Shown piece after piece: positions 784 through 13,751 of a stretch of 64,000 nt of DNA. The notes beneath the pieces are model-generated. The model ran no database searches and had not been told where the DNA came from. It was given only the letters and a program-made list of their open reading frames with translations. Positions within the stretch are counted from its first letter, which is position 1. Each line of letters begins with the position of its first letter. Both the position numbers and the translations under genes were made by a program. This DNA is from Cyanophora paradoxa CCMP329 (lineage: Eukaryota > Plantae > Glaucophyta): NCBI GenBank assembly GCA_004431415.1, contig QPMI01000482.1:470169-534168 (forward strand), read 5' to 3'.

Positions 784-3700
784 ATGCCGCCGGTACTAGT
801 GCCGGCGCACCGGCGCGCGGGCACACATGCGCACCTCGCGGTGGCGGCGCTGCTCGTGTGCGCCCTGAGCATGCACTTCCCCTCCGGTGCGCGCCGCCCC
901 GCAGGTCGCTGCGCCCTCTAGATCTTCGACCCCGCCCGCGGCCGCCCCTAACCTCTCGCTCGTGCGTCCCTCCCGGCGCGCTCGCCCTCAGCCTCGGGCT
1001 TCGCGACGCTCTACCAGTCGGGCTCTGACGTCTTCTGCGCCGTCGGAGAGTGCGCTGCCGTTGACCCTCTGCCGAAAAACTCGCCAGATCCATGGCCAGT
1101 TCTAGATCGAGAGCTCGCGATCGAGCGCTCGACGATGCGGCCGCGGGGCCACGCGCACGGGCGTACGTGCCTAGCTTATGGGGCCGGGCGCCGGCTGCAG
1201 GACGTGCAAGGTGGAGTGGAGCAGCACGGAGGCGGTAAACTTCTACTTCTGCAAGTCCGGCTCCCTCACCCAGGACGCCTGCTTCCGCGTGCGCGCCCCG
1301 CCCTGCACCCTCGCCGGCTGCGAGGGCGCGCGCTTGAGGCGTCGTGTGACGGGTTCCGGCGGCGCGTGCTGGCAGCTGGCGGCCAACAAGGCGGCGAGCA
1401 GCAGCCGGACGGTCTCGTACTTCACGCCCACCCTCGCCGACTTCCAGACGTGCGCGCCCCGGCCCCATTCCCCGCCTCCCCCCACACCTCTCTCGAGCTC
1501 GGGGCCCCTCGCAGAGTCTGCGGCTCAACATCCTAGTGCGCCCCTGCCCCCGACCCCGGCAACCCCTGCCCCTCTCTGACCCCCCCCCCCCCCTCCACAG
1601 CGGGTGCCTGGTGATGTGGGTGGTGTGGCCGAGCGCGTCGAGCGTCGCCTCGGACTCGCGCTCCCTCGACGTCGCCCTCATGCGCAACGACGTCCTCTCC
1701 TACCGGCCCGCCCCCGCCCCCCCGTCACACCGCCCCTCGCAGCCCAGAGGGGCGGCGACGCGGGAATGCCTGCGTCGGCGGCTGACCGGCCGGCGCCTCC
1801 CACCGCAGGGCGGACACGTCGGAGTCGTGCCAGGCCGACGACACGTGCAAGGTGCGGCTTCCCCGGCCGCGGGGGCCCCCAGCTCTCCCTTGCGCCCCCC
1901 TGCGGGTCTAGAGCCGGCGCGGGGGGCGCCAGCGTCGCGCCAGCGCCCCGCTCACCGCCGGCAGGTGCACTGGACGGGGGTCTACCGCGCAGACGTCTAC
2001 CTCTGCAAGGCCTCCGCCTTCGCCTCTTCCTCCTGCCACAGGGTCCGCGCGCCCCCGGCCCCGGCCCGGCACGACATCGCGCATGCGCGAGCTCCGCGTG
2101 AGCGGTGCGCGCCGGGCGGCAGATCGTGTCGGGGGCGGAGTGGGTGCACGAGCCGACGACCTTCAAGCTCCCCTCCGCCGCCGTCTCCGCCGTCTGCGGC
2201 AGCGCCGCCTCCTCCTGCGCCGCCTACTGGGTCAGCGCGCTCGATCTCGACCTCCGGATCTCATAGAGGACCCTCGCCTCTCTTCCTCACGGGGGGCGGC
2301 AGGTTGTGATGCCGGCCGGCTCGTCGACGGGGGCGCTGGGGGACTCGGAGGCGGTGGCGGTGAAGGCGGCCCCGAGCGCGAGCGCATCCTCCGCCGTCGT
2401 TGCCATCGTCGTCGTGTGCGCCCGCGCCCGCCGCCCCCCGCCGAGCCCCCCGCCCCAGCTGCACGCCACTCGCGATCGAGCGCGGGGGCTTGGCCTGGCT
2501 GCGGCTGATGGCGAGGGGCGCGCAGGGTGGTGATCGGCGCGCTGGTGGTGGTGGCGGTCGCCGCGGCGATCGTCGTCAGGCGGCGCCGCGGCCGGCGCGC
2601 CAAGATCGGCGCCTTCGCCTCCGGCCCCAACGAGGTCCGCTCCGCTCCGAGGCTGCCCCGAGGCTCTCGCCCCCCGCTGAGCCGCCTCGTTTCCAGGTGG
2701 CAGGCGGGCCCAAGCCGATCACAGTGTGCGCACGCGTCGCCTCGATCGTGGTTCAGTCCACTCTCAACAGTCGGGGCTGACGCGGCTCGCTCCCCTCCGC
2801 AGCATCTCGAGCGCTCTCGTGGCCCCCGTCCCCATGCAGCCGTACCCCATGCAGCCGCAGCAGCAGCCGTACCCCTACGCCCCGCAGCAGCAGGCCTTCA
2901 TGCCCCAGCAGCCGTACCCGGGTGAGTTTGAGCGGCCCTTTGCCGTCCCCTCCAGTACTCAAAAGCTCATCCGTTGGAGCAGGCGGGTACCCGAGGCAGG
3001 GATATCCCCCCGCCCCCGGCTACAGCTACCAATACCAGCAGCAAGCGCAGCCACAGCCGATGGAGCAGCCGATGACCATGCACCCCCAGATGCAGATGCA
3101 GCAGCCTCCTGGGTACCCCCCGCAGCCGCAGCAGCAGCAGCCGGGGTACCCTCCGCCGCCGGAGGGGTACCCCGGGGCGGAGGTGAGCCGCGACCTCTTC
3201 CGATCGGGGAGCATGGCGGGCGCCGGGGCGGCCCCCGCCGGCCCTCTCTTCGCGCGCAGCGCGTCGCTCGGGCCCCAGTGCGCCCGCCTGCCTCCCCTCC
3301 GCTCCCCTTCCCATTCGCTTTCCTCTGATCCGTTCCTGTCGCTTTCAGGTTCGAATACCACGTCTTCATCAGGTGCCAGCCCCCTGCGCTCGTCGAGCCG
3401 ACATTAAGAAACGTTTAAGGGCTCTGACGGGGCGGCAGCTACCGGCGGGCCGGGGGCGCGGACCGGGCGCACTTCATCCGGGACCGCCTGGCGGCGCAGG
3501 GCTACAAGGTCTTCATGGACGTCACGGAGCTCGGCCAGGGCAACTTCGAGTCCCAGATCGTCGTGCGCCCCCGCGACGCCGCCGGCTTCGGAGCTCGATC
3601 TCCCCCCCCTCTGCCGTGAAGTGAGCTCGAGGCGCGGCCGCTGAGGCGCGGGGGCCGGGGCCCGGGGCGGGGACAGAACTGGCTGCGGGGCTCGGCGTGC

Positions 3701-4179
3701 GTGCTGGTGGTGCTCTCGCCGGGGGCCCTCGACCGCTGCCGCGACGAGGCCGACTGGGTCCGCAAGGAGCTCGCCATGGCCTGCGCCCTCAAGAAGGCCC
3801 GCCTCGAGCCCGCCCCGCGCCCCGCCCCCCCGCCTCCGCTGAGCGGCGCCCAGACGATCGTGCCCGTGACGGACGCGGCGTTCACGTGGCCCCACGAGGG
3901 CGACCTCCCCGACGAGATCCGCGCCATGCCGCGCCACAACGGTGCCGGCTCCCCCCGCATCCCCCGCCACCCTCAGCGGGGCCCCTGATCATGACTTGGG
4001 CCGGCGCAGGGGTGATGTGGCACCACGACATGGTGGACGCCTGCATGCAGCGCATCTGCGCCTTCGTCGACGGCTCCGTCCGCAGCGCCACCCTCGCCCC
4101 GGCGCAGGGCCCCGCCCTCGCCCCGGCGCAGTGCCCCGCCCCCCACGCCGCCCCCGCTGGCCTCCAGGCGAGCCAGTAG
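784..4179 (+). CDS. Type I transmembrane receptor-like protein: signal peptide, two Cys-rich ectodomain repeats, TM helix, Pro/Gln/Tyr-rich linker, C-terminal SARM1-like TIR domain (~18 exons)
   Basis: Manual splicing gives an N-terminal hydrophobic leader (LAVAALLVCALSMHF) and repeats CAVGETCKVEW...VCGSTSYGCLVMWVVWP and CQADDTCKVHW...VCGSAASSCAAYWVVMP. The TM segment is AVVAIVVVVVIGALVVVAVAAAIVV followed by RRRRGRR. TIR exons 3349-3372, 3439-3562, 3677-3796, 3854-3941 and 4010-4179 read FEYHVFISYRRAGG...YKVFMDVTELGQGNFESQIVNWLRGSACVLVVLSPGALDRCRDEADWVRKELAMACALKKTIVPV...FTWP...LPDEIRAMPRHNGVMWHHD. Confidence 0.88.
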
Positions 4180-4926
4180 CTCTTTCGCGCTGCTTCAAGT
4201 TCGCGCTGCCCCCGCCGCCGCGCTAAGAAATTTCTTAGTAGCTCGTGGATCGATTTCATCTTCATTCATGTGCGAACTCAGTGGCTCTCATCTGGATTAA
4301 TTTCGATTGCGAGTATGCAGCTCGTAAGCTTAGGTTTGTTCTGTATTTGCAGTTGCTTCATGCATGTACAGCTGCTTCAACTTGGCAATTCTGTATTCTT
4401 TATTCTGGATTCTGTAGTCCAGTACTAGTACTAGTGCAGTCCGGATCTATTACGTATACTAGTCTGAGAGTCTTGACCTTCGCTTCCGTATACAGCCACG
4501 CTCGATGCCCCGAGGTTCCCAATTAACGCAGTGATCAATCAACACTGTGACATTCACACGGCCTCATTAGTTTTCCAGTATACATAGTACTCATGATCGA
4601 TCAATGCATATGGTCCCATTAGTGTTCCCCGTTGGTTTTCGCGAGCTGATCATGACGATATCGATGTGCGTGTTTGCAACAAGGTTTAGATCTATAGCTA
4701 GCGCTAAATTGCAATTGCTGAATTAATGTCGACTATAGCTATCGAATTCGATTCCGGTGTTCTCTGAAGCTCATCATGGCCATACCAGTCAGAGTCGACG
4801 TCGACGTCGAAATGGTACCGGTGCGCGAAATTCTGACAAAGTTGGCTAAGCTTTCAAGAAATGTACAAAATCTATAGCTAAGACGGTGCTGAGCTTGAGC
4901 ATGATTCGGGGCCCTCCGGATCCAGC

Positions 4927-7900
4927 CTAGGAGACGCTCTTAAAAGCGGCGGCGGGGGCGGAGCTGCGGCGGCGCTTCGCGGCCCCCTGCTCGATCGGCT
5001 CGCGCGCCACAGACACCTGCAAGAAAATTAAAGCGAGGCCGGTCAGGTCGTTCGCGAGACACGCGTTGAAAGGAGGCTTAAGCTTTGGGTTGTTCATCAA
5101 ATCGAAGTTTGAGAGGGCTGCGGGCCTTGGCGTAGACGCGGGAGGCGACGGCGGCGGCGACCATGCGGGGCCCGCCCTCCAGCTGCACGCTCCCCGCCCG
5201 CCCCCGCCCGCCCTCCCCCGCGCCCCTGCCCCCGCATCCGATCGACTCGAGGGCCGAATCTGAGGCTCGGAAGGGCCGGCGCACGCGAGGGGGAGGCTCT
5301 CCTCCGCGTCGGCCTCAGCGCCGCTCCCGTCCCCGCTCGAGAGCGCCCGCTTCGCCCCGCGCCTCCCGCCCCCGCCCCCGCCCTGCGGGGAACAGCGGTG
5401 ATGAGAGCTGGTGGGGCGCCGGCGGGGCGGGCGGGCCTTCTTGGAGGGGAGAGGGGCCTGGCCGCCGGCCTGCGCCTCCTGCCCCGCCAGCGTCCCCCGC
5501 CCCGCCTTCCCCTTCCGCCCCGCCGCCCCCGCCCCCGCCCCCGCCTTCCCCTGCGCCTCGGCGTCCCCCGCGTCGAAGTCGAAGGCTGCCGAATGACAGC
5601 GCGCGCGATCAGCTTTCCGCGCATGGCAGATAGCACCGCTTTAAATTCAAAATGAAATCTGAGAGGGCATGGCTGCATCCGGAATCAATTTACTCACCGC
5701 TGGCAGCAACGGAGCCCTCCTTGTCCCCTGCGGAATTCGAAGTAAAATAATTATATAATGTCGATGCATATGCTGGATTCTAATTTCGCGCAAGCGCGAA
5801 TAATTTTAAATGGCGTCGTAGGGGGCCACCGGTGCGGGTTGCGCCCGTGGCTGCGGGGGCCTTGGCCTTGTCGGCCTCGTGGGGCGGCGGGTGGCCAGCG
5901 ATGGCGACGGCAGCGGGCCCCGGGGGCGGTTTCGGGATGCCCCCGGCGACGTCACCCTGCGCACGTCGCTGAGCTTGGATGCGCAATCGGACTGTTTTGA
6001 CTTCTAGTTGATGAAGATATGGAGAGATCAATCTTCATTCCATATCTTAATTTAATTTCTTGAAAATCGCGAGAGCTGGCGCGCAGGGACCGGGGGCGAG
6101 GGGGCGCGCGGGCCTGCTTGGCGAGCTCGAAGAGGCGGTCGTTCAGAGCGTCCGCCACAACCTGCCGCCCTGCGCACGCCCCCCCCGCCCCCGCCTCGAC
6201 TTGGAGCGCGGACCGTTTTATGTATTGGCCGGGCCGGGGCTCGCGATCGCGGGCGGGCGCACCGCGGCCGCGGCCGCGGGGGGGACGAAGAAGGCCCTCC
6301 TTCTCCATCCGCTCCATCGCGACCTGAGGCGAGTCGAGTGAGCTCGGGCGAGGCCGGATGCTTCGGGTTCGAAGGGAGGGCGGGCCTCGACGTCGGGGAG
6401 GGCGAGGCCGGAGGCCTCGGCGAGGGCCCCCGCGCTCACGGAGGCCTTCCCCGCCGCCGCCTGCACGCACAGCGCGTACTTCTCTGCGCCCCGCCCCCTC
6501 GAGCTCAGGACCGACCGCGAGGCGCGGGCGGGGGCGCGGAGGGCGGGGGCGGCGTGATCGGGCGGGCGGACGCTCGTCGGCGGAGGCGTCGCGGGGCTGC
6601 TCCTGCGCCGCCCCCTCCCCTGCCTCCTCCATCACCATCGCCGTCGCCCCCGCCTCCTGCCCCCGCGGTCCCCGACTTGAATCCCTCGGATTCAAGTAGA
6701 GAGCACGGCGTGCATCGATGCGCAGCGCATCTACATGCGGATCGACGGACCGCGGGCTCGGCGGCGGCCTCCCGCGGGGCGAGCGGGGGCGAGGGAGCGG
6801 TGGTGCGCTGCAGCTGCGTCGGGATCTTCTCGCGGTCGGCGGTGTGGGCGGCGATCGACGCCGACACCGATACCGGCACCGACGCCTCGGAGGACGCGGC
6901 CTGCGAGGAAGATTAATCATAAAGGCAGTCGGAGCGATATCCGCGGATTTAAATTTCTGCCCTTCGGAATGAATTCGAGAGGGGTGTGGGGGGGCGGGCC
7001 TCGCGGTCGGCGGTGGCGTGGCGGGGGATGCGGAGGGCCCAGCGGCTCGCCCCGCGCTTCACGAGGACGCCCTCCTCCGCCATCTGGTCCAGGAACGCTG
7101 CAGCCCCGCGCCGCGCCCGGAACGCATCGACTTTATATCAGAGATGAATTCGATCGCGGGGCGGGGCGCGCACCGCGGACGGTGTCCTCGTCGAGGAAGG
7201 GGAAGGCGGTGGAGAGGGCCTTCAGGGGGGGGGGGGGGGGGGGGGGGGCGTTAGAGCCGCGAAAAGCGGGGGCGAGGGCCTTGGCCTTGGGGCGGGGCGC
7301 CGGGGGGCGGGCCTTCATGTTGGGGGCGAGGCGGCGGGCCTTGATCTCCTCGACGGCCCCGTCGTACGCCGCGTCCACGTCGACCTCGGCTTCCCCGCCC
7401 CCCGCCGCCTGCGCGAGCGAGCGAGCGCGACCCTGCCATCAGCACGATGTCGACCGCAGGAAGGAATATTACTGGAAATTCAAGAGCGGACGGTGAGGAG
7501 ACCCACCTCCTCGTCTGGGGCCTCGGACGGCGCCTCCGGGGCGGGCTCCGGAGCCGGCGCAGCGCGAGATTTATTGCCGACAGCTGTGCACGCCGGCGAA
7601 TCAATTTGCAAATGCGAACAGACGTATACTTAAGGCTAGTGTGCGCAGCGAATTAAGATTGCAGAATAAATCTAAAAAGACTAGGGCGCTCTAGGTAGGT
7701 CTAGGCCTCGGGCCTAGAGCTCGAGGTATTATTAACATTGTTATTATTATTGATGCCAAGGGCGGGGAGCCTCGGAGCTCACAGAGGCCGGAAAGACCGC
7801 CCTTGAGAGGCTCCTCCTGCGCGCGAGCCCTGCAGAGCCCTCCTCAGCACGAAAATGCAGAGAGCGGGCGGGCGCGCACTTGGCCGCGGCCGGCGCCGCC

Positions 7901-9798
7901 GCCTCGTCGAGCTCGTCCAACACCGACGTGTCGATGTCCCCGCCCGCGATCTGGCGAGAAGCAGCGGTCGCGAGAGCTCGGCCCCGCGAGGTTCACGCGC
8001 AGATCGATATCTAGAGTCGGAGAGCTTGATTTCCCGGCGGGGCTCCACCTTCAGGGTGAGGTTGTGGTACTGCGTCTCGACGTTTCCGACCTGCGCGTGC
8101 ATTTCAAATTTATAAAGTTCGTCGGCCGCGGGCCGGCCTTCAATTTTCGCGCGCTATACGTTTGCTTTTCCGCACCTTGATCTTAGCGAGGGTGGGGTCC
8201 ACGCGCGCTGCGTCTTGAATACGAAGAATGGAATGTTAATTCGATTTGAGGTACAGCTCATTTAAAAACTACATCATGATTGGCACCTGGTGGACCGGCG
8301 CTGAAGAACTCGGGCTCGTAATCTGCGAGGCACGTCGCGTCACAATATTACAATATTAGAATTCACTCAGCGGCGTGAAAAAACCAGTCGATCGCACCCG
8401 GCGGGGTTATGTCATCGCGGTACAGCAGCTTCATTGTCAGGAAACGTTCGTCTGCGGTGGATCGAATTTAGCAATCGGCTTTAGGCCTCGGGCTGGAGCT
8501 CGAGGTTCATAAGAATATGACTGCGTTCAGACCGGGGATCGGAGGGAGGGTCTGGGCGAGTGTGATGAGAGTGCGAAGCAGCCGAACTGCGAATGCGAAA
8601 ATGGAGAAATTAATTATATAAATCGATTTCCCGGGCCGGTGCGTTGCCGCGCTGTTTTGATTTGGGGCGCAAACTTCTATAGTTAGTTGATTGCTTGCAA
8701 TTTGCTTCTGTACGGACCTGTGGCGCCGGTGATCTCGGCGCGCGTGGGGCCGGCCGTCGCGGCGCCGGCGCCCTCGGTCGTCGTCGTCGCCTTGCGCCGG
8801 CCGTTCGTCGTCAGCTCCATTCGAGGGCCCGCGTCCGTGTACGTGATACCGACTGCGCGATCGCGATTAGGGATTTATGGAGTTCAATTGCAACGCGAAC
8901 GTCGACGCAAAAGGGGACGCGGGGCGAGTGCGCACATTCGTAGCGCTCTAGAGCCGTCGACTCGTCATCCGGATCGAGCATTACCGCGAATATCATCGCC
9001 CGCAGCTACGAATTTGATTCAAATGAAAAATTTAAAATTTGTAAACAAAGACCGTTAACGTTCATATGCATGGCCACGCACGTATTGCTTCTCAAGCGCA
9101 TCGAAAACTCCTTTCTGTGCGCGCGTGCGATTACTTGTCGAATGCAAGCGGCAGCTGCAGGCCTAGGCCCAGACATCGATATCGATGTTCATCTTGTTCT
9201 ATCACGAGCTAGGCCGCACCTCGAGCCAGTCGATGAGCAGGCGGGACTCCTCTGTATTCGCGATGATGGCCTACGAGCGGCAAAGGTAAGATTCTAGATC
9301 GAGGAGCTCGAGGAAAGGCAGCGCTAGCGCGCACCTTGATATTGATCCCTGACACTGTGCGATCGTTGAAGCAATCTGAGCGCGCGCGAAAACTCTCTCA
9401 GCGCCTCCGATAACGAGGGCCGGCGCGTCCAAGAATCTAAGCTTGCGTAGTTTGGGGCGTCCAGCTCGGCCCGGGCCCAGGCAAGCTTTAAGGCAAGCCC
9501 GAGGCGCGGCCGCGGCCTTCGAATTCGGCACTTCATTGCACTTCGAGACGCGAAATTAAAAATGCCTCGCCTTCGGGGAAGATGTTGCGCAGGTAGCAGA
9601 CCGAACTAATACTGGTTCGGAGGAGGTTGCGCATCAATTTGAGGCTCTGCGCGAGCGGGCGCGCGATGTGAGCGCGGCTCGCGCCAAATTGATCGCCGGG
9701 CGCCCATTCGGGCCTGAGACTGCGCGCGAAGCTTCTCGCACCTGCTCTGATGTCACTTCCTGCTCGGTGCGGTGCGCCTGCGCCTGCGCGACCGCCAT
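4927..9798 (-). CDS. HOP1: Meiotic chromosome-axis HORMA-domain protein (Hop1/ASY1/HORMAD family) with two putative winged-helix segments and a C-terminal closure motif
   Basis: Spliced exons read MAVAQAQ...SLKLMRNLLRTSISSVCYLRNIFPE-DCFNDRTVSGINIK...EESRLLIDWLE-GVFDALEKQY...[40 protein letters not shown]...VGNVETQYHNLTLK, collinear with the ASY1/HORMAD HORMA domain. The C-terminus KVSVAREPIEQ resembles the ASY1 closure motif. Stop TAG at 4929-4927. Confidence 0.92.
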
Positions 9799-9862: not shown

Positions 9863-10798
9863 ATGTCGTCGAAGCGGGCGAAGCCGTCGGTGCGCGCCAG
9901 TCCCGTGCGATCGAAGTAGCTAGCCATTACTCTTCGGACCGAGCGACCGAATCGCCCGGGGTCGTCGCCCACCCGCGCCAGCATTCCGCAGCGTTTCGGC
10001 GATTGCAGGCTCTCGTATTGGGCCTTCTAGCGCCGGGATAGCCATTATCGCCCGATCGGGCCTCCGGGAACGTGGGTTGCGACTCCGAGCCTCGGGGATG
10101 ACGCCCCGCTATTCGCGGTTGATGCGCGACCTCCCGGAATCTGATACATCGGATTGCAGAAGGACGAGGAGGAAGAGGAGGAGGAGCAGGAGTCCGACTT
10201 CGACGAGCAGGAGAACAGCGAGAGCGACGAGGGGGAGTCGAAGGTGCCCGAGCTGGTCGCCCGTGTACACCACGTACGCGCTCGCTTCGGGCCCCTTAGC
10301 TCCTTGCAGAAACGGCGCAAGAGCGGCGAGAAGGGCAGCTCGTCGTCCGCTCCTAAGAAGAAGGACGCGGACGAGGAGGAGGGATCGGGCGAAGAGGAGG
10401 TTCGCTCCGCTTTCGCCGTTGCTATCTTCGAATCCTAACGCATTCTCAGGAGGAGGGCTCCGAAGAATCTGAGGAGGGATCGGAGGAGGAGGAGGAGGAT
10501 GGTGGCGAAGAGGATGGTGCGCCCCGCCGTGCCCCGCCCTGGGCCGCCCGCCTCCTAGGCTAGGCTCCGCCGCGTCGGGCCCGCCGCGCCCGGCCTGAGC
10601 TCGAGGCTCGGCCTGCCTCGCACCACGCTGCGGCTGACTCGTATACAATGCGCAGTTGCCGACGAGCTTGCCGCTTTGCAAGAGGAGGCCGACATGCCGA
10701 TCGGCGAGGTGATGGAGCGCGCTGCACGGAAGCGCGGGAAGGACGCTCCGTCCCCGCCGCTCCCGCCGGGGGAGAAGGGGAAGCGGCGCGTTGGTTGA
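9863..10798 (+). CDS. Small, highly acidic, probably nuclear protein with an ELAALQEEADMPI motif (candidate histone chaperone)
   Basis: Exons with GT-AG ends read MSSKRAKPS|KDEEEEEEEQESDFDEQE...|KRRKSGEK...PKKKDADEEE|EEGSEESEE...|VADELAALQEEADMPIGEVMERAARKRGK...KRRVG*. Basic NLS-like patches are present. The first exon assignment is less certain. Confidence 0.65.
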
Positions 10799-11383
10799 GC
10801 TTAGAGTAGGATGTCGTTTTTCCCGCACCTCCGCCTCGGGCCCTCCCGGCGCCGGCAGTTCAGGTAGTTTCAAGTGTATTTTGGATTTTCCAGCGCAGTT
10901 CTCCAGTCTCGCTCAAGGGGCCGCGCAGCCCGCGGCGCCGGCCGCCCGCAGCCAGCGCCGGTTCGAAATATCGATCGGCATCGTATCGGGACTCGGGAGG
11001 CGCCAATACTACATCTAGTTCTGCAAGGTTCCCGGTTCCCGCCGGGCCGCGCATGGCGACCGTCGGACAACGCGCCGACGTCGACATGCACAGGCGCCGG
11101 CGTCCCGGCGCGGCCACGTGCACGCTGCTGGCTACATATACGTAAGTATACGCTGAATTGGTTTTTAATTTTCGCCACACGAGACATCGATGCATCACTC
11201 CGGCTGGCGCATCATGGCATAGGGAAGCTCGGGCTGCTGTCAAAGAGCGGCTGCATTATGAGCTTGCTGGTAGAGCGAGCCCAGGTCGAGCGAGCCCGGC
11301 TGCGGGCTGCCGCGATGCGCGGCCAGTGGGCCAGTGGGCCACTGTCTGGGGGGTACGTCGCCACACATCGGCGCAAAGCGCGA

Positions 11384-13751
11384 ATGTCGGGGGCTCCAGC
11401 GGCGCCCGCCGCGCCGCCCGCGGGCGTGCCCTACATCGGGTCGCGCATTTCGCTCATCAGCAAGTCCGAAATTCGGTACGAGGGCATCCTGTATACGATT
11501 GACAAGCAGGAGAGCACCGTCGCCCTCGCCAATGGTGCGTCACGGTCTCATGCATCGATCGATCGGAACGCTTCGCCAGTCTCGCGACCCGTTGGCTGAC
11601 CGCGCTGTGCCATCACCCAGTCCACTCGTTCGGCACGGAAGGCCGGCGGAAGGAGGGGCCCCAAGTCCCACCCTCGAACGATACGTATGACTACATCATC
11701 TTTCGGGGTTCGGATATCAAGGACCTGCACGTCTGCGAGGCCGCGCCAACACCGCCAGTTCCATCGGCTCTGCCGGCGAACGACCCGGCCATCATCAACG
11801 TTCGTGCACCTGCCACTTTGTCTTTGCTTTCACCCAGTTCCACTTCTTCGTGCCGTCGGCGGCGCATTAGCATCTCGAACTGTCCATGTTGCCCACTCGT
11901 CGCTCGCGTCGCCACTTCCTGTTCCGTTTGCTGATCTCGCTCTTTGTCTTCCAGAATCCGCAGGCACAGCCAGGCCAACAGGGCGGCGCGCAGCAGCCGA
12001 TGCCGCCTCCCTACAATGCGTTCGGACCCAACCCGTATGGCGGAGGCATGATGCCACCGTATCCTGGATTCCCGCAGCCCGGTTTTCCGCCCTATCCTTT
12101 CATGGGCCCTCCCGGCTCGTACTTCCCTGGGCAGCCTGGTCCCTTCCCGCCACCGGGCGCTCCAGGCGCTCCGCCTCCTGGCGCACCCGGCGGTCCGCCC
12201 CCTGGGCAGCCTGGTGCTGGTGCTCCTCAGGGCCCTCCTTCGGGCCAGATGCCGCCCTCTTCCGGTGCTCAGCCGTCTGCTGGCGCCCCTCGGCCCGGCC
12301 CTCCCCAGCCCTCTGGTCCCGCTCCGGCCGGAGCTCGCCCGGGTCCCCCTCCCAATGCCCAGCAGCCTCCTCGCCCCGTCGGCGCGCCTCAGCCCGCTCC
12401 CCATGCCGGTCGCGGCGGTCCCCAGGCCCCGCAAGGCGCTCCGCAGCAGGCGGGCCGCGGCCGTGGCGGCCCCGGCCCGGCTCCTCAGCCGCAGCAGAAC
12501 CAGAACCGCCCGCCCGCGAACTACGCTGCCGCCGTTGGCGGTGCGCTCCTGTCTGCCACCGTCGCGATCCGCAATGGTAGTTGACGGCATCGTGCGCAGG
12601 GGCGAAGCCGGCGCAACCCAGCGCTAACCCTCCTTTGATCCCCATTGGCGGTGCTCCTGGCGTTCTTCCGATCGGGTTCGCCGTCTTGCCCTTTCTCCGC
12701 GCTGTCCCTGTCTCCGCGCTGTCCCTTTCCTGAACTTCGCTCCCAGCAACGTTGTCGAGTACCAAGGGCAGGCCGGTGGTCGCGGTGGCTTCCGCGGTGG
12801 CCGCGGTGGAAACGGCGGTGCCCCGAACGGAGGGCGCGGCGGCCAGCAGGGCGGCCGCGGCGGTCCCATGGGCGGCGCCGGCGGCCGTGGCGGCGGCCCT
12901 CCGGGCGGTGGTGCGCCTCTTGCATCGCCCCGCGCCTCTTTTTTTGATTTGCCGCTCCACAGGCCGCGCGTTCGGCCCGGGCGGCGCCCCCGCCGTCCCG
13001 ACCAAGCTGGAGGAGTTCAACTTCGAGGAGGCGAACGCCCGCTTCAAGAAGGACGAGCTCGGCGCCGAGATCCTCGTGCGCCCGCCCCGTTTTCTCTCTC
13101 CGGAAACGCGCGTGTGTCCGACGCGCCGTCTCTGCAGCACAAGCCGGTCGAGGAGGAGGTCCCCGAGGACGGCGGCGCCGAGGACGCCTCCAAGGTCCCC
13201 CGCCCTCGCTGCCCGGCCCCCGTCGTCCCGCCACGCCGCCCAACCTCACCGCCGTCGCGCAGTCCAAGTCTTCCGTCGCGTACAACAAGAGCAAGTCGTT
13301 CTTCGACGAGATTTCGTGCGAGGCTCTCGAGCGCCAGCTCGACGCCGGCGGCCGGTGAGCAGGCTCCGACCTGGAGCGAGGGCCTCTCTATCTTTTTTGC
13401 GTTCCTGATCGTGTTCTGCGGGGGCAGTCCCATGCGGCAGATGCAGGAGCAGCGCAAGATCGACCTGGAGACCTTCGGCTCCCTCTCCCTGGGCCGTGGT
13501 CGCGGCCGCGGCCGGTGCGCGGCGTTCTTTTGCTACGCTTTCGTTCCATTCTTCTTTTCTGAACAGGAGGTCAGGTACCACCACCGCGGCGGCCACCGCG
13601 GCGGCTACGGGCGGCCGCAGGGCGATCAGAATCGCTCCGGCGGCGGCGGCCGCGGCGGCATGCCGGTTCGCGCTTCTTGCTTTTTCCTTTTCTTCCGCTT
13701 TTCTTACCTTCGTGTCCTTAGTCCGGCCCGGCGGCGGCGGCCAAGGCCTGA
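11384..13751 (+). CDS. LSM14: LSM14/Scd6/RAP55/DCP5 mRNA decapping and P-body protein
   Basis: LSm14 domain [25 protein letters not shown]...[10 protein letters not shown]...[16 protein letters not shown], a Pro/Gln-rich linker and RGG repeats. FDF-like motif ([14 protein letters not shown]), FFD motif ([14 protein letters not shown]) and TFG motif ([10 protein letters not shown]) are all present. Confidence 0.95.

What the first reader, a model, noticed from the sequence alone, without database searches (positions are those of the whole stretch)
784..4179. Toll-like-architecture membrane receptor carrying a SARM1-type TIR domain with the NADase catalytic Glu
Seen: once spliced, the gene encodes signal peptide + Cys-rich ectodomain + one TM helix + cytoplasmic TIR. 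The ORF track hides this. Established: the TIR sequence (VFISYRR..G; F+DV..L..G.FE; VLVVLSPGALDRC; DWVRKEL; IVPV...F.WP...LP.++.A+...NG+.W.H) follows human SARM1 TIR (FVLVLSPGALDKC...DWVHKEI) more closely than the scaffold-type TIRs of animal TLR/IL-1R. The Glu equivalent to SARM1 E642 is kept (GAG 3767-3769). SARM1, plant TNL and bacterial (Thoeris-type) TIR enzymes are mostly soluble, whereas animal TM-TIR receptors are non-enzymatic. Inference: this is a cell-surface receptor that, on ligand-induced clustering, directly cleaves NAD+ to make a nucleotide signal or trigger cell death. That would be a candidate innate-immune system in a unicellular alga/protist.
Basis: partly seen in the sequence, partly recalled or inferred. 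Interest (0 to 1): 0.9.

Follow-up and report, generated by a model that had tools for sequence, protein, structure and literature searches.

The report
Algal membrane receptor with SARM1-type enzyme
The glaucophyte alga Cyanophora paradoxa has a gene for a one-pass membrane receptor whose inner end is an NAD+-cutting domain of the SARM1 type (the enzyme that destroys injured axons in animals), so an outside cue may switch on NAD+ cleavage directly; the parts are real, but activity, ligand and immune role are untested, and similar receptors are already known elsewhere.

Summary
Observation confirmed. Window 784-4179(+) is a 19-exon gene that matches, exon by exon, the public model tig00020830_g14506 of Cyanophora paradoxa (622 aa). 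Layout: probable signal peptide, two 6-Cys Ig-like repeats (Kre9/KNH-like, weak), one TM helix, a Pro/Gln/Tyr-rich linker, and a TIR. The TIR is SARM1/TIR-1 type (E 1e-29, all other solved TIRs >0.03; model Z 22, 1.6 A). It keeps the catalytic Glu528 and the six other substrate contacts checked (five identical); three assembly or BB-loop residues differ. Its many relatives are bacterial TIRs, most with a predicted TM; origin is unresolved (AU p 0.47). It is neither a SARM1 ortholog nor a TLR. Best reading: a clustering-activated NAD+-cleaving receptor (0.45). I found no report of a SARM1-clade TIR on a type I eukaryotic receptor, or in glaucophytes. Only one intron has RNA support; a cryptic intron at 3183-3259 would cut off the TIR. 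The scan noted other SARM1-like TIR genes in this genome (unchecked). New variant of a known kind.

The parts
784..4179 (+). Whole gene, 19 exons: 784-886, 992-1049, 1201-1288, 1376-1449, 1515-1535, 1601-1705 (GC donor; 1681 is an in-frame alternative), 1809-1851, 1965-2042, 2123-2230, 2303-2415, 2526-2634, 2697-2725, 2803-2921, 2983-3277, 3349-3372, 3439-3562, 3677-3796 (GC donor), 3854-3941, 4010-4179. Equals Cyanophora paradoxa tig00020830_g14506.t1 (P0001, 622 aa).
784..999 (+). Probable signal peptide, aa 1-37 (basic n-region, h-region aa ~18-32, small residues at -3 and -1 before F38)
   Evidence: hydropathy; cleavage site is inference; SignalP not available
1006..1670 (+). Ectodomain repeat 1 (aa ~40-138), 6 Cys, beta-sandwich, Kre9/KNH-like Ig-like domain (weak match)
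1695..2345 (+). Ectodomain repeat 2 (aa ~147-240), the same 6 Cys, 29-30% identical to repeat 1; shares one phase-0 intron position with it (1289 and 2043)
2390..2577 (+). Single TM helix (aa ~256-281, split by intron 2416-2525), followed by a basic stop-transfer patch; type I topology inferred
2816..3185 (+). Cytosolic low-complexity linker aa 315-417 (29% P, 26% Q, 12% Y; five GYP repeats; one PPxY at 391); candidate condensation or adaptor segment
   Evidence: intron 2922-2982 confirmed in an RNA contig
3183..3259 (+). Possible cryptic intron (GTGAGC donor, CAG acceptor, 77 nt) inside exon 14; its use would frameshift the TIR away. Weakest link of the model
   Evidence: in-frame GC3 0.92; coding score -2.5 bits against -18 and -30 in the other frames; no RNA coverage
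3350..4080 (+). SARM1/TIR-1-type TIR domain (aa ~448-590) over five exons
3767..3769 (+). Catalytic Glu codon, E528 = SARM1 E642
4235..4600 (.). Stretch covered by contigs in all four RNA-guess runs; probably this gene's 3' UTR (strand and link to the CDS not shown). A contig at 530-750 may be the 5' UTR

Best explanation
A type I single-pass receptor-enzyme. The signal peptide sends it to the plasma membrane or a secretory compartment (inferred). Two disulfide-held Ig-like domains face outside and bind a multivalent ligand, most plausibly a microbial or damage-derived surface polymer (inferred; ligand unknown). Clustering in the membrane, helped by the Pro/Gln/Tyr-rich linker, replaces the SAM-domain ring of SARM1. 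It lets the TIRs form the head-to-tail two-stranded assembly in which the NAD+ site spans two TIRs (inferred from SARM1/TIR-1). The TIR then cleaves NAD+ via Glu528 to nicotinamide plus ADPR/cADPR, giving a danger signal or NAD+ collapse and death of the infected cell (inferred). Shown here: gene structure, domain order, TIR class, kept pocket. Not shown: localisation, ligand, activity, product, role.
For: Pocket map from the SARM1 alignment and papers naming the residues: R569=R458, F603=F492, L607=I496, W638=W524, E642=E528, W662=W549, N679=N566. Assembly residues H685=H572, D594=D483 and G601=G490 are also kept. The TIR model (pLDDT 91) fits SARM1 at Z 22.2, 1.6 A over 137 residues, against Z 16 for the best IL-1R-family TIR. 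All 251 fetched relatives that cover the site keep the Glu (partly selected by the query). Most relatives are membrane proteins (102 TIR-TM-ectodomain, 21 TM-then-TIR), some beside CHAT/TPR, STALD and NACHT conflict genes. So this TIR family already sits on membranes in sensor-type layouts. SARM1 and TIR-1 need multimerisation or a phase transition for activity, and TIR-1 uses it in gut immunity (PMC8266388, PMC8923663). TM-TIR enzymes exist, and algal ecto-TM-TIR genes rise early in virus infection.
Against: No assay. Three positions important in SARM1 differ: E596=T485 (T in 4% of relatives), K597=E486 and Y687=M574 (M in 3%). Only about one in six Glu-bearing eukaryotic TIRs was active in a bacterial screen. 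The ectodomain has no close relative and no known ligand. RNA coverage is thin and does not link the TM to the TIR. The neighbours are not immune genes. No glaucophyte pathogen or downstream pathway was identified here.
Confidence: 0.45

Rival explanations
1. Same receptor-enzyme, but for a non-immune cue (cell contact, own extracellular matrix, mechanical or osmotic stress), making low levels of cADPR/ADPR as a Ca2+-type second messenger with no cell death.
For: The ectodomain's best leads are Kre9/KNH-like domains, a family tied to fungal cell-wall and GPI-anchored proteins (own knowledge). Most active eukaryotic TIRs in the screen made cADPR without depleting NAD+. No paralog in the window and no immune neighbours.
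Against: Tested SARM1-clade TIRs act in danger, immunity or death; bacterial kin sit in conflict-type loci.
Confidence: 0.15
2. Scaffold receptor: the TIR has lost or nearly lost catalysis and recruits soluble SARM1-like TIR partners (for example the LRR-SAM-TIR proteins noted elsewhere in this genome), as most TLRs recruit MyD88.
For: BB-loop and EE-loop changes (T485, E486, M574). TLR2, IL-1R9 and IL-1R10 keep the Glu yet show no activity. Other SARM1-like TIR genes are reported in this genome (unchecked).
Against: All seven substrate contacts checked are kept across a long branch (0.9-1.0 changes per site), which suggests selection on catalysis. Acidic or Ser residues at the K597 site are the norm among relatives.
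Confidence: 0.15
3. Tethered guard: the TM and ectodomain keep an autoactive NADase apart, and cleavage of the long linker by a host or pathogen protease releases the TIR to self-assemble and kill the cell, as proposed for Dictyostelium TirC.
For: TirC is tolerated at full length and toxic without its TM. The ~165-aa linker between TM and TIR is probably disordered and exposed.
Against: A duplicated, disulfide-rich ectodomain is better explained by ligand binding than by a plain anchor.
Confidence: 0.12
4. The receptor-TIR fusion is not the main product: the 3183-3259 intron is spliced (giving a TIR-less decoy) or the TIR is made separately from ATG 3212, and the public model joined two units.
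For: 3183 is a strong GTGAGC donor; 3259 is a CAG after a pyrimidine run; 77 nt is a typical intron size here; the coding score is ambiguous (-2.5 bits). The RNA contig stops at 3131.
Against: The frame is open from 2983 to 3277 with GC3 0.90-0.94 in the TIR-joining frame. The only acceptor before the TIR (3348) needs exactly the phase given by the 3278 donor. There is no room for an intergenic stretch. The independent model agrees.
Confidence: 0.1

Closest known systems
SARM1 / C. elegans TIR-1 (TIR clade 8 of 10.64898/2026.04.30.722052)
   Same: TIR about 39-42% identical, Z 22, same catalytic Glu and NAD+ pocket; presumably activated by oligomerisation.
   Different: No ARM sensor and no SAM domains; has a signal peptide, ectodomain and TM instead. 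T485, E486 and M574 differ from E596, K597 and Y687. Orthology of the TIR is neither shown nor rejected.
Bacterial SARM1-like TIR membrane proteins (TIR-TM-FGE/PEGA/DUF4384; CHASE2-TM-TIR; NMT1/TAXI-TM-TIR) of Planctomycetota, Bacillota, Actinomycetota and others
   Same: TIR 38-47% identical with Glu kept; membrane-spanning with an extracytoplasmic part.
   Different: Mostly the opposite order (TIR first, type II); different ectodomains; no Pro/Gln/Tyr linker; intronless; not tested as enzymes as far as I found.
IL-1 receptor family and Toll-like receptors
   Same: Type I topology: ectodomain-TM-TIR; IL-1Rs also use Ig-like ectodomains. TLR4 TIR makes cADPR.
   Different: TIR is of another clade (Z 16, <=20% identity); no LRR; ectodomain is not a Pfam immunoglobulin; long linker; independent assembly.
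Gephyrocapsa huxleyi cogent1101_i1 (PMC12489294)
   Same: Algal ectodomain-TM-TIR with the catalytic Glu, proposed as a signal-making receptor in virus infection.
   Different: Its TIR is described as RPS4-like, and its ectodomain as leucine-binding/EGF-like; not assayed.
Dictyostelium TirC
   Same: Protist TM-anchored TIR NADase of bacterial type; activity shown.
   Different: CAP12/Pycsar clade 6 TIR; a bare TM anchor with no ectodomain.
Kre9/KNH-like N-terminal Ig-like domain (PF10342)
   Same: The two repeats give E 2e-4 together and all top ESM feature hits; tandem beta-sandwich model.
   Different: Below Pfam's cut-off (22.3 of 24.6 bits), ESM score only 0.79; six-Cys pattern with no sequence relatives found.

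Membership tests
SARM1-clade TIR domain | Best sequence and structure match is SARM1/TIR-1, far above other TIRs | tested here: met
SARM1-clade TIR domain | Catalytic Glu and NAD+ pocket (R569, F603, L607, W638, E642, W662, N679) | tested here: met
   six identical, L607 to I
SARM1-clade TIR domain | Metazoan BB-loop motif E-(R/K)-L-E-A-G and EE-loop H685/Y687 | tested here: not met
   G490 and H572 kept; T485, E486 and M574 differ; the metazoan motif is also not met by most bacterial kin
SARM1-clade TIR domain | NAD+ glycohydrolase activity on oligomerisation | not testable with these tools
   needs an assay
SARM1 orthologs | ARM repeats plus tandem SAM domains ahead of the TIR | tested here: not met
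   Pfam finds only TIR_2; TM and ectodomain instead
SARM1 orthologs | TIR groups with animal SARM1/TIR-1 to the exclusion of bacteria | tested here: inconclusive
   not grouped in the ML tree or in 200 bootstrap trees, but one clade is not rejected, AU p 0.465; only one nematode row and one SAM-TIR row of unknown, probably eukaryotic source
Toll-like receptors | LRR ectodomain | tested here: not met
Toll-like receptors | Signal peptide, one TM, cytosolic TIR | tested here: met
   (hydropathy only)
Toll-like receptors / IL-1R | TIR of the animal clade-1 type | tested here: not met
IL-1R family | Immunoglobulin-superfamily ectodomain | tested here: inconclusive
   beta-sandwich fold with only generic matches (Z <7); no Pfam Ig hit
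Kre9/KNH-like domain (PF10342) | Reaches Pfam gathering score | tested here: inconclusive
   22.3 bits against 24.6, E 2e-4; ESM features 0.79
Innate-immune pattern receptor | Binds a microbial ligand; induced by or needed in infection | not testable with these tools
   no infection data; RNA coverage sparse

The most novel reading that the evidence does not exclude
The first eukaryotic cell-surface receptor that wires an extracellular ligand directly to a SARM1-clade NADase, with a prion-like Pro/Gln/Tyr linker standing in for SARM1's SAM ring. It would be one arm of a glaucophyte immune kit in which the same TIR is shuffled onto membrane and cytosolic sensors. That would give the glaucophyte lineage of Archaeplastida a one-protein 'sense outside, cut NAD+ inside' pathway, and a natural chassis for ligand-gated NADases.
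Probability: 0.3. Interest if true: 0.8.

Novelty: new variant of a known kind. Interest (0 to 1): 0.55.

Why it matters
Immunity in glaucophytes is essentially undescribed: full-text searches found no paper on Cyanophora TIR proteins. [quoted passage not shown] This gene extends the clade to a new lineage and to an architecture I could not find reported for it in eukaryotes: type I receptor with Ig-like repeats. If active, it shows that receptor-TIR enzymes were assembled independently of Toll/IL-1R, bears on whether SARM1's TIR came from one old transfer or several, and offers a small, culturable system to test how membrane clustering gates SARM1-type catalysis. The concept of a membrane TIR enzyme is no longer new, which caps the score.

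Tried and rejected
Exons were searched by window reference, and the full-length work used stored protein P0001, which the tools returned. RNA: only 5% or less of sampled words in RNA-guess runs; one junction confirmed. Ectodomain relatives: none by word search; whole-protein ESM search blank; structure searches gave only generic beta-sandwich hits (PDB Z <=6.8, atlas TM <=0.51, viral E >=9e-4), so no ligand could be inferred; the EsV-1-163 hit is only a lead. Viral contigs: no relative of the TIR. Single-sequence scans of genomes and metagenomes were blank; alignment scans found bacterial loci. Two alignments were too diverse for the genome scan. Trees of 147 columns could not place the TIR: the pairing with CHASE2-TM-TIR P0004 is unstarred and joins two of the longer branches, so no donor is claimed. 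P0119 (nematode TIR-1-like) has assembly duplications; insert columns were dropped. No paralog in the window. Rejected: TLR membership; SARM1 orthology by architecture; bacterial contamination (18 spliceosomal-type introns, one seen in RNA); chance ORF. The primary paper on the BB-loop mutants was not held; those facts come from PMC7075850 and PMC6363435.
Full report
Source and gene model. The window is a GC-rich, intron-dense eukaryotic sequence. Reading three frames and splice sites gave 19 exons from ATG 784 to TAG 4179. All introns are 57-151 nt; 16 are GT-AG and 2 GC-AG; phases match throughout. Exons have GC3 0.95 and introns show no such consistent frame bias; GC drops to 0.43-0.50 only after the stop. 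A by-reference search with the TIR exons returned a 622-aa protein, P0001, at 99% identity. It is EukProt Cyanophora paradoxa tig00020830_g14506.t1, so the organism is the glaucophyte Cyanophora. Every exon translation occurs exactly and in order in P0001; the only difference from my first chain is the end of exon 6 (1705 rather than 1681, both GC donors, both in frame). As the operators asked, I did not send a joined model to any search; full-length work used P0001.

RNA support is thin. RNA-guess runs hold 5% or less of the sampled words. One contig spans intron 2922-2982; others cover 530-750 and 4235-4600, the likely UTRs. Nothing bridges the TM exons to the TIR exons. The weakest point is 3183-3259: a strong donor and a plausible acceptor 77 nt apart, whose use would put the TIR out of frame. 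The segment has GC3 0.92 in the joining frame and scores far better in that frame than in the others, but its absolute coding score is ambiguous. The single acceptor before the TIR needs exactly the phase of the 3278 donor. I put the fused product at about 0.9.

Anatomy. Residues 1-37 look like a signal peptide (hydropathy peak 1.72; no SignalP here). Residues ~40-240 are two repeats, 30% identical (E 4e-13), with six aligned Cys each. One phase-0 intron falls at the same place in both repeats, which suggests the duplication happened in an intron-containing gene (inference). A single-sequence model (pLDDT 57) gives two beta-rich domains with only generic Ig/FN3-like matches. Pfam Kre9_KNH scores E 2e-4, just under its cut-off, and ESM features point to the same family at lead level. 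No sequence relative was found. One TM helix (aa ~256-281, peak 3.46) is followed by a basic patch, implying a cytosolic C-terminus. Residues 315-417 are 29% Pro, 26% Gln and 12% Tyr with GYP repeats and one PPxY. The TIR spans aa ~448-590 (Pfam TIR_2 E 1e-12).

The TIR is SARM1-type. Against solved structures it hits C. elegans TIR-1 and SARM1 at 1e-29 to 1e-27; the next TIR is at 0.03. An alignment-based model (pLDDT 91) matches SARM1 TIR at Z 22.2, 1.6 A over 137 residues; IL-18R, plant and SPARTA TIRs score 14-16. From the alignment and papers naming the contacts (10.64898/2026.02.03.703613; 10.1101/2024.11.19.624255): R569=R458, F603=F492, L607=I496, W638=W524, E642=E528 (codon 3767-3769), W662=W549, N679=N566. 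D594, G601 and H685 are kept too. E596, K597 and Y687 are replaced by T485, E486 and M574. The BB-loop residues matter for SARM1 activity (PMC7075850), K597E is a dominant-negative in SARM1 (PMC6363435), and Y687 helps the two-stranded assembly. Acidic or Ser residues at the K597 site are, however, normal among the relatives.

Relatives. About 250 related TIRs were fetched. Those with names or contigs are nearly all bacterial: Planctomycetota, Bacillota, Actinomycetota, Nitrospinota, Bacteroidales and others. They are 38-47% identical to the query and themselves hit SARM1 as strongly as it does. Of 217 with 200 aa or more, 134 have a predicted TM: 102 are single-pass TIR-TM-ectodomain proteins and 21 have the TM before the TIR, including CHASE2-TM-TIR and NMT1/TAXI-TM-TIR. 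Two loci checked lie beside CHAT/TPR, STALD and NACHT-TPR genes. The set also holds a nematode TIR-1-like protein and a SAM-TIR protein of probably eukaryotic source. Trees do not resolve the origin: the Cyanophora TIR does not group with those two in the best tree or in 200 bootstrap trees, yet a single clade is not rejected (AU p 0.465). It shares with SARM1/TIR-1 a Trp at 570 that is rare in the bacterial rows. One old eukaryotic acquisition and a separate transfer both remain open.

How it most likely works. SARM1 and TIR-1 are weak until their TIRs are packed together, and TIR-1 uses this in gut immunity (PMC8266388, PMC8923663). This protein lacks the ARM lock and the SAM ring. The simplest reading is that ligand-driven clustering in the membrane, aided by the low-complexity linker, supplies the packing, and the TIR then cleaves NAD+ to give ADPR/cADPR or to drain NAD+ (0.45). 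Rivals: the same enzyme used for a non-immune cue (0.15); a non-catalytic scaffold for soluble SARM1-like partners (0.15); a tethered NADase released by proteolysis (0.12); the fusion not being the real product (0.10). Taken together, I put Glu-dependent NAD+ cleavage by this TIR at about 0.7-0.75.

Comparison with what is known. It works like SARM1 at the catalytic end and like a Toll/IL-1 receptor in topology, but is a member of neither family. TLR4 and some invertebrate TLR TIRs make cADPR, most eukaryotic TIRs outside TLR/IL-1R keep the Glu, and only about one in six tested were active (10.64898/2026.04.20.719644). [quoted passage not shown] G. huxleyi has virus-induced ectodomain-TM-TIR proteins with the Glu (PMC12489294). 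I found no paper on Cyanophora TIRs or on a SARM1-clade TIR in a eukaryotic type I receptor; the library is incomplete. Other first-stage notes on this genome describe LRR-SAM-TIR and TIR-TM-propeller genes; I could not check them, and my searches returned no Cyanophora paralog.

Verdict. Real feature; new variant of a known kind; interest 0.55. The novel reading (a ligand-gated SARM1-clade NADase receptor in a glaucophyte immune kit) has probability about 0.3 and would merit 0.8.

Noticed in passing
window 11384-13750 (+): Intron-rich LSm14/Scd6-type gene (Pfam LSM14 E 4e-14 on exon 1), with Pro/Gln- and RGG-rich parts; ordinary housekeeping neighbour.
   Followed up: partly
window 9863-10800 (+): Spliced gene for a very acidic (Glu/Asp-rich) protein with basic patches, possibly nuclear; not identified.
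   Followed up: no
window 4900-9600: Stretch between the receptor and the next clear gene, with GC-rich patches and degenerate-looking minus-strand ORFs; no clear gene seen.
   Followed up: no
window 4093-4140: Short 24-nt tandem duplication in the last exon, giving a repeated LAPAQ motif in the C-terminal tail.
   Followed up: no
window 3186-3277: Linker just before the TIR holds two RxxS-type motifs, candidate kinase sites that could gate the TIR.
   Followed up: no
L037:6001-11535: Bacterial TIR-TM-DUF4384 gene (nearest row to the query in one tree) next to a TPR-CHAT caspase-like gene, with an HSP90-like and another TIR-WD40 gene nearby: a possible undescribed conflict system.
   Followed up: no
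L039:6001-13827: Bacterial NMT1/TAXI-3TM-TIR receptor beside STALD, DUF4062-NACHT-TPR and LRR-TPR genes: a cluster of NAD-targeting candidates.
   Followed up: no
L041:831-2276: SAM-TIR protein with a helical N-terminal part (P0253) from run SRR8389943, SARM1-like and probably from a non-animal eukaryote; apparently read through an intron.
   Followed up: partly
proteins P0004, P0163-P0248: Large untested bacterial family of membrane proteins with SARM1-like TIRs, including CHASE2-TM-TIR and PAP2-phosphatase-TIR fusions.
   Followed up: partly
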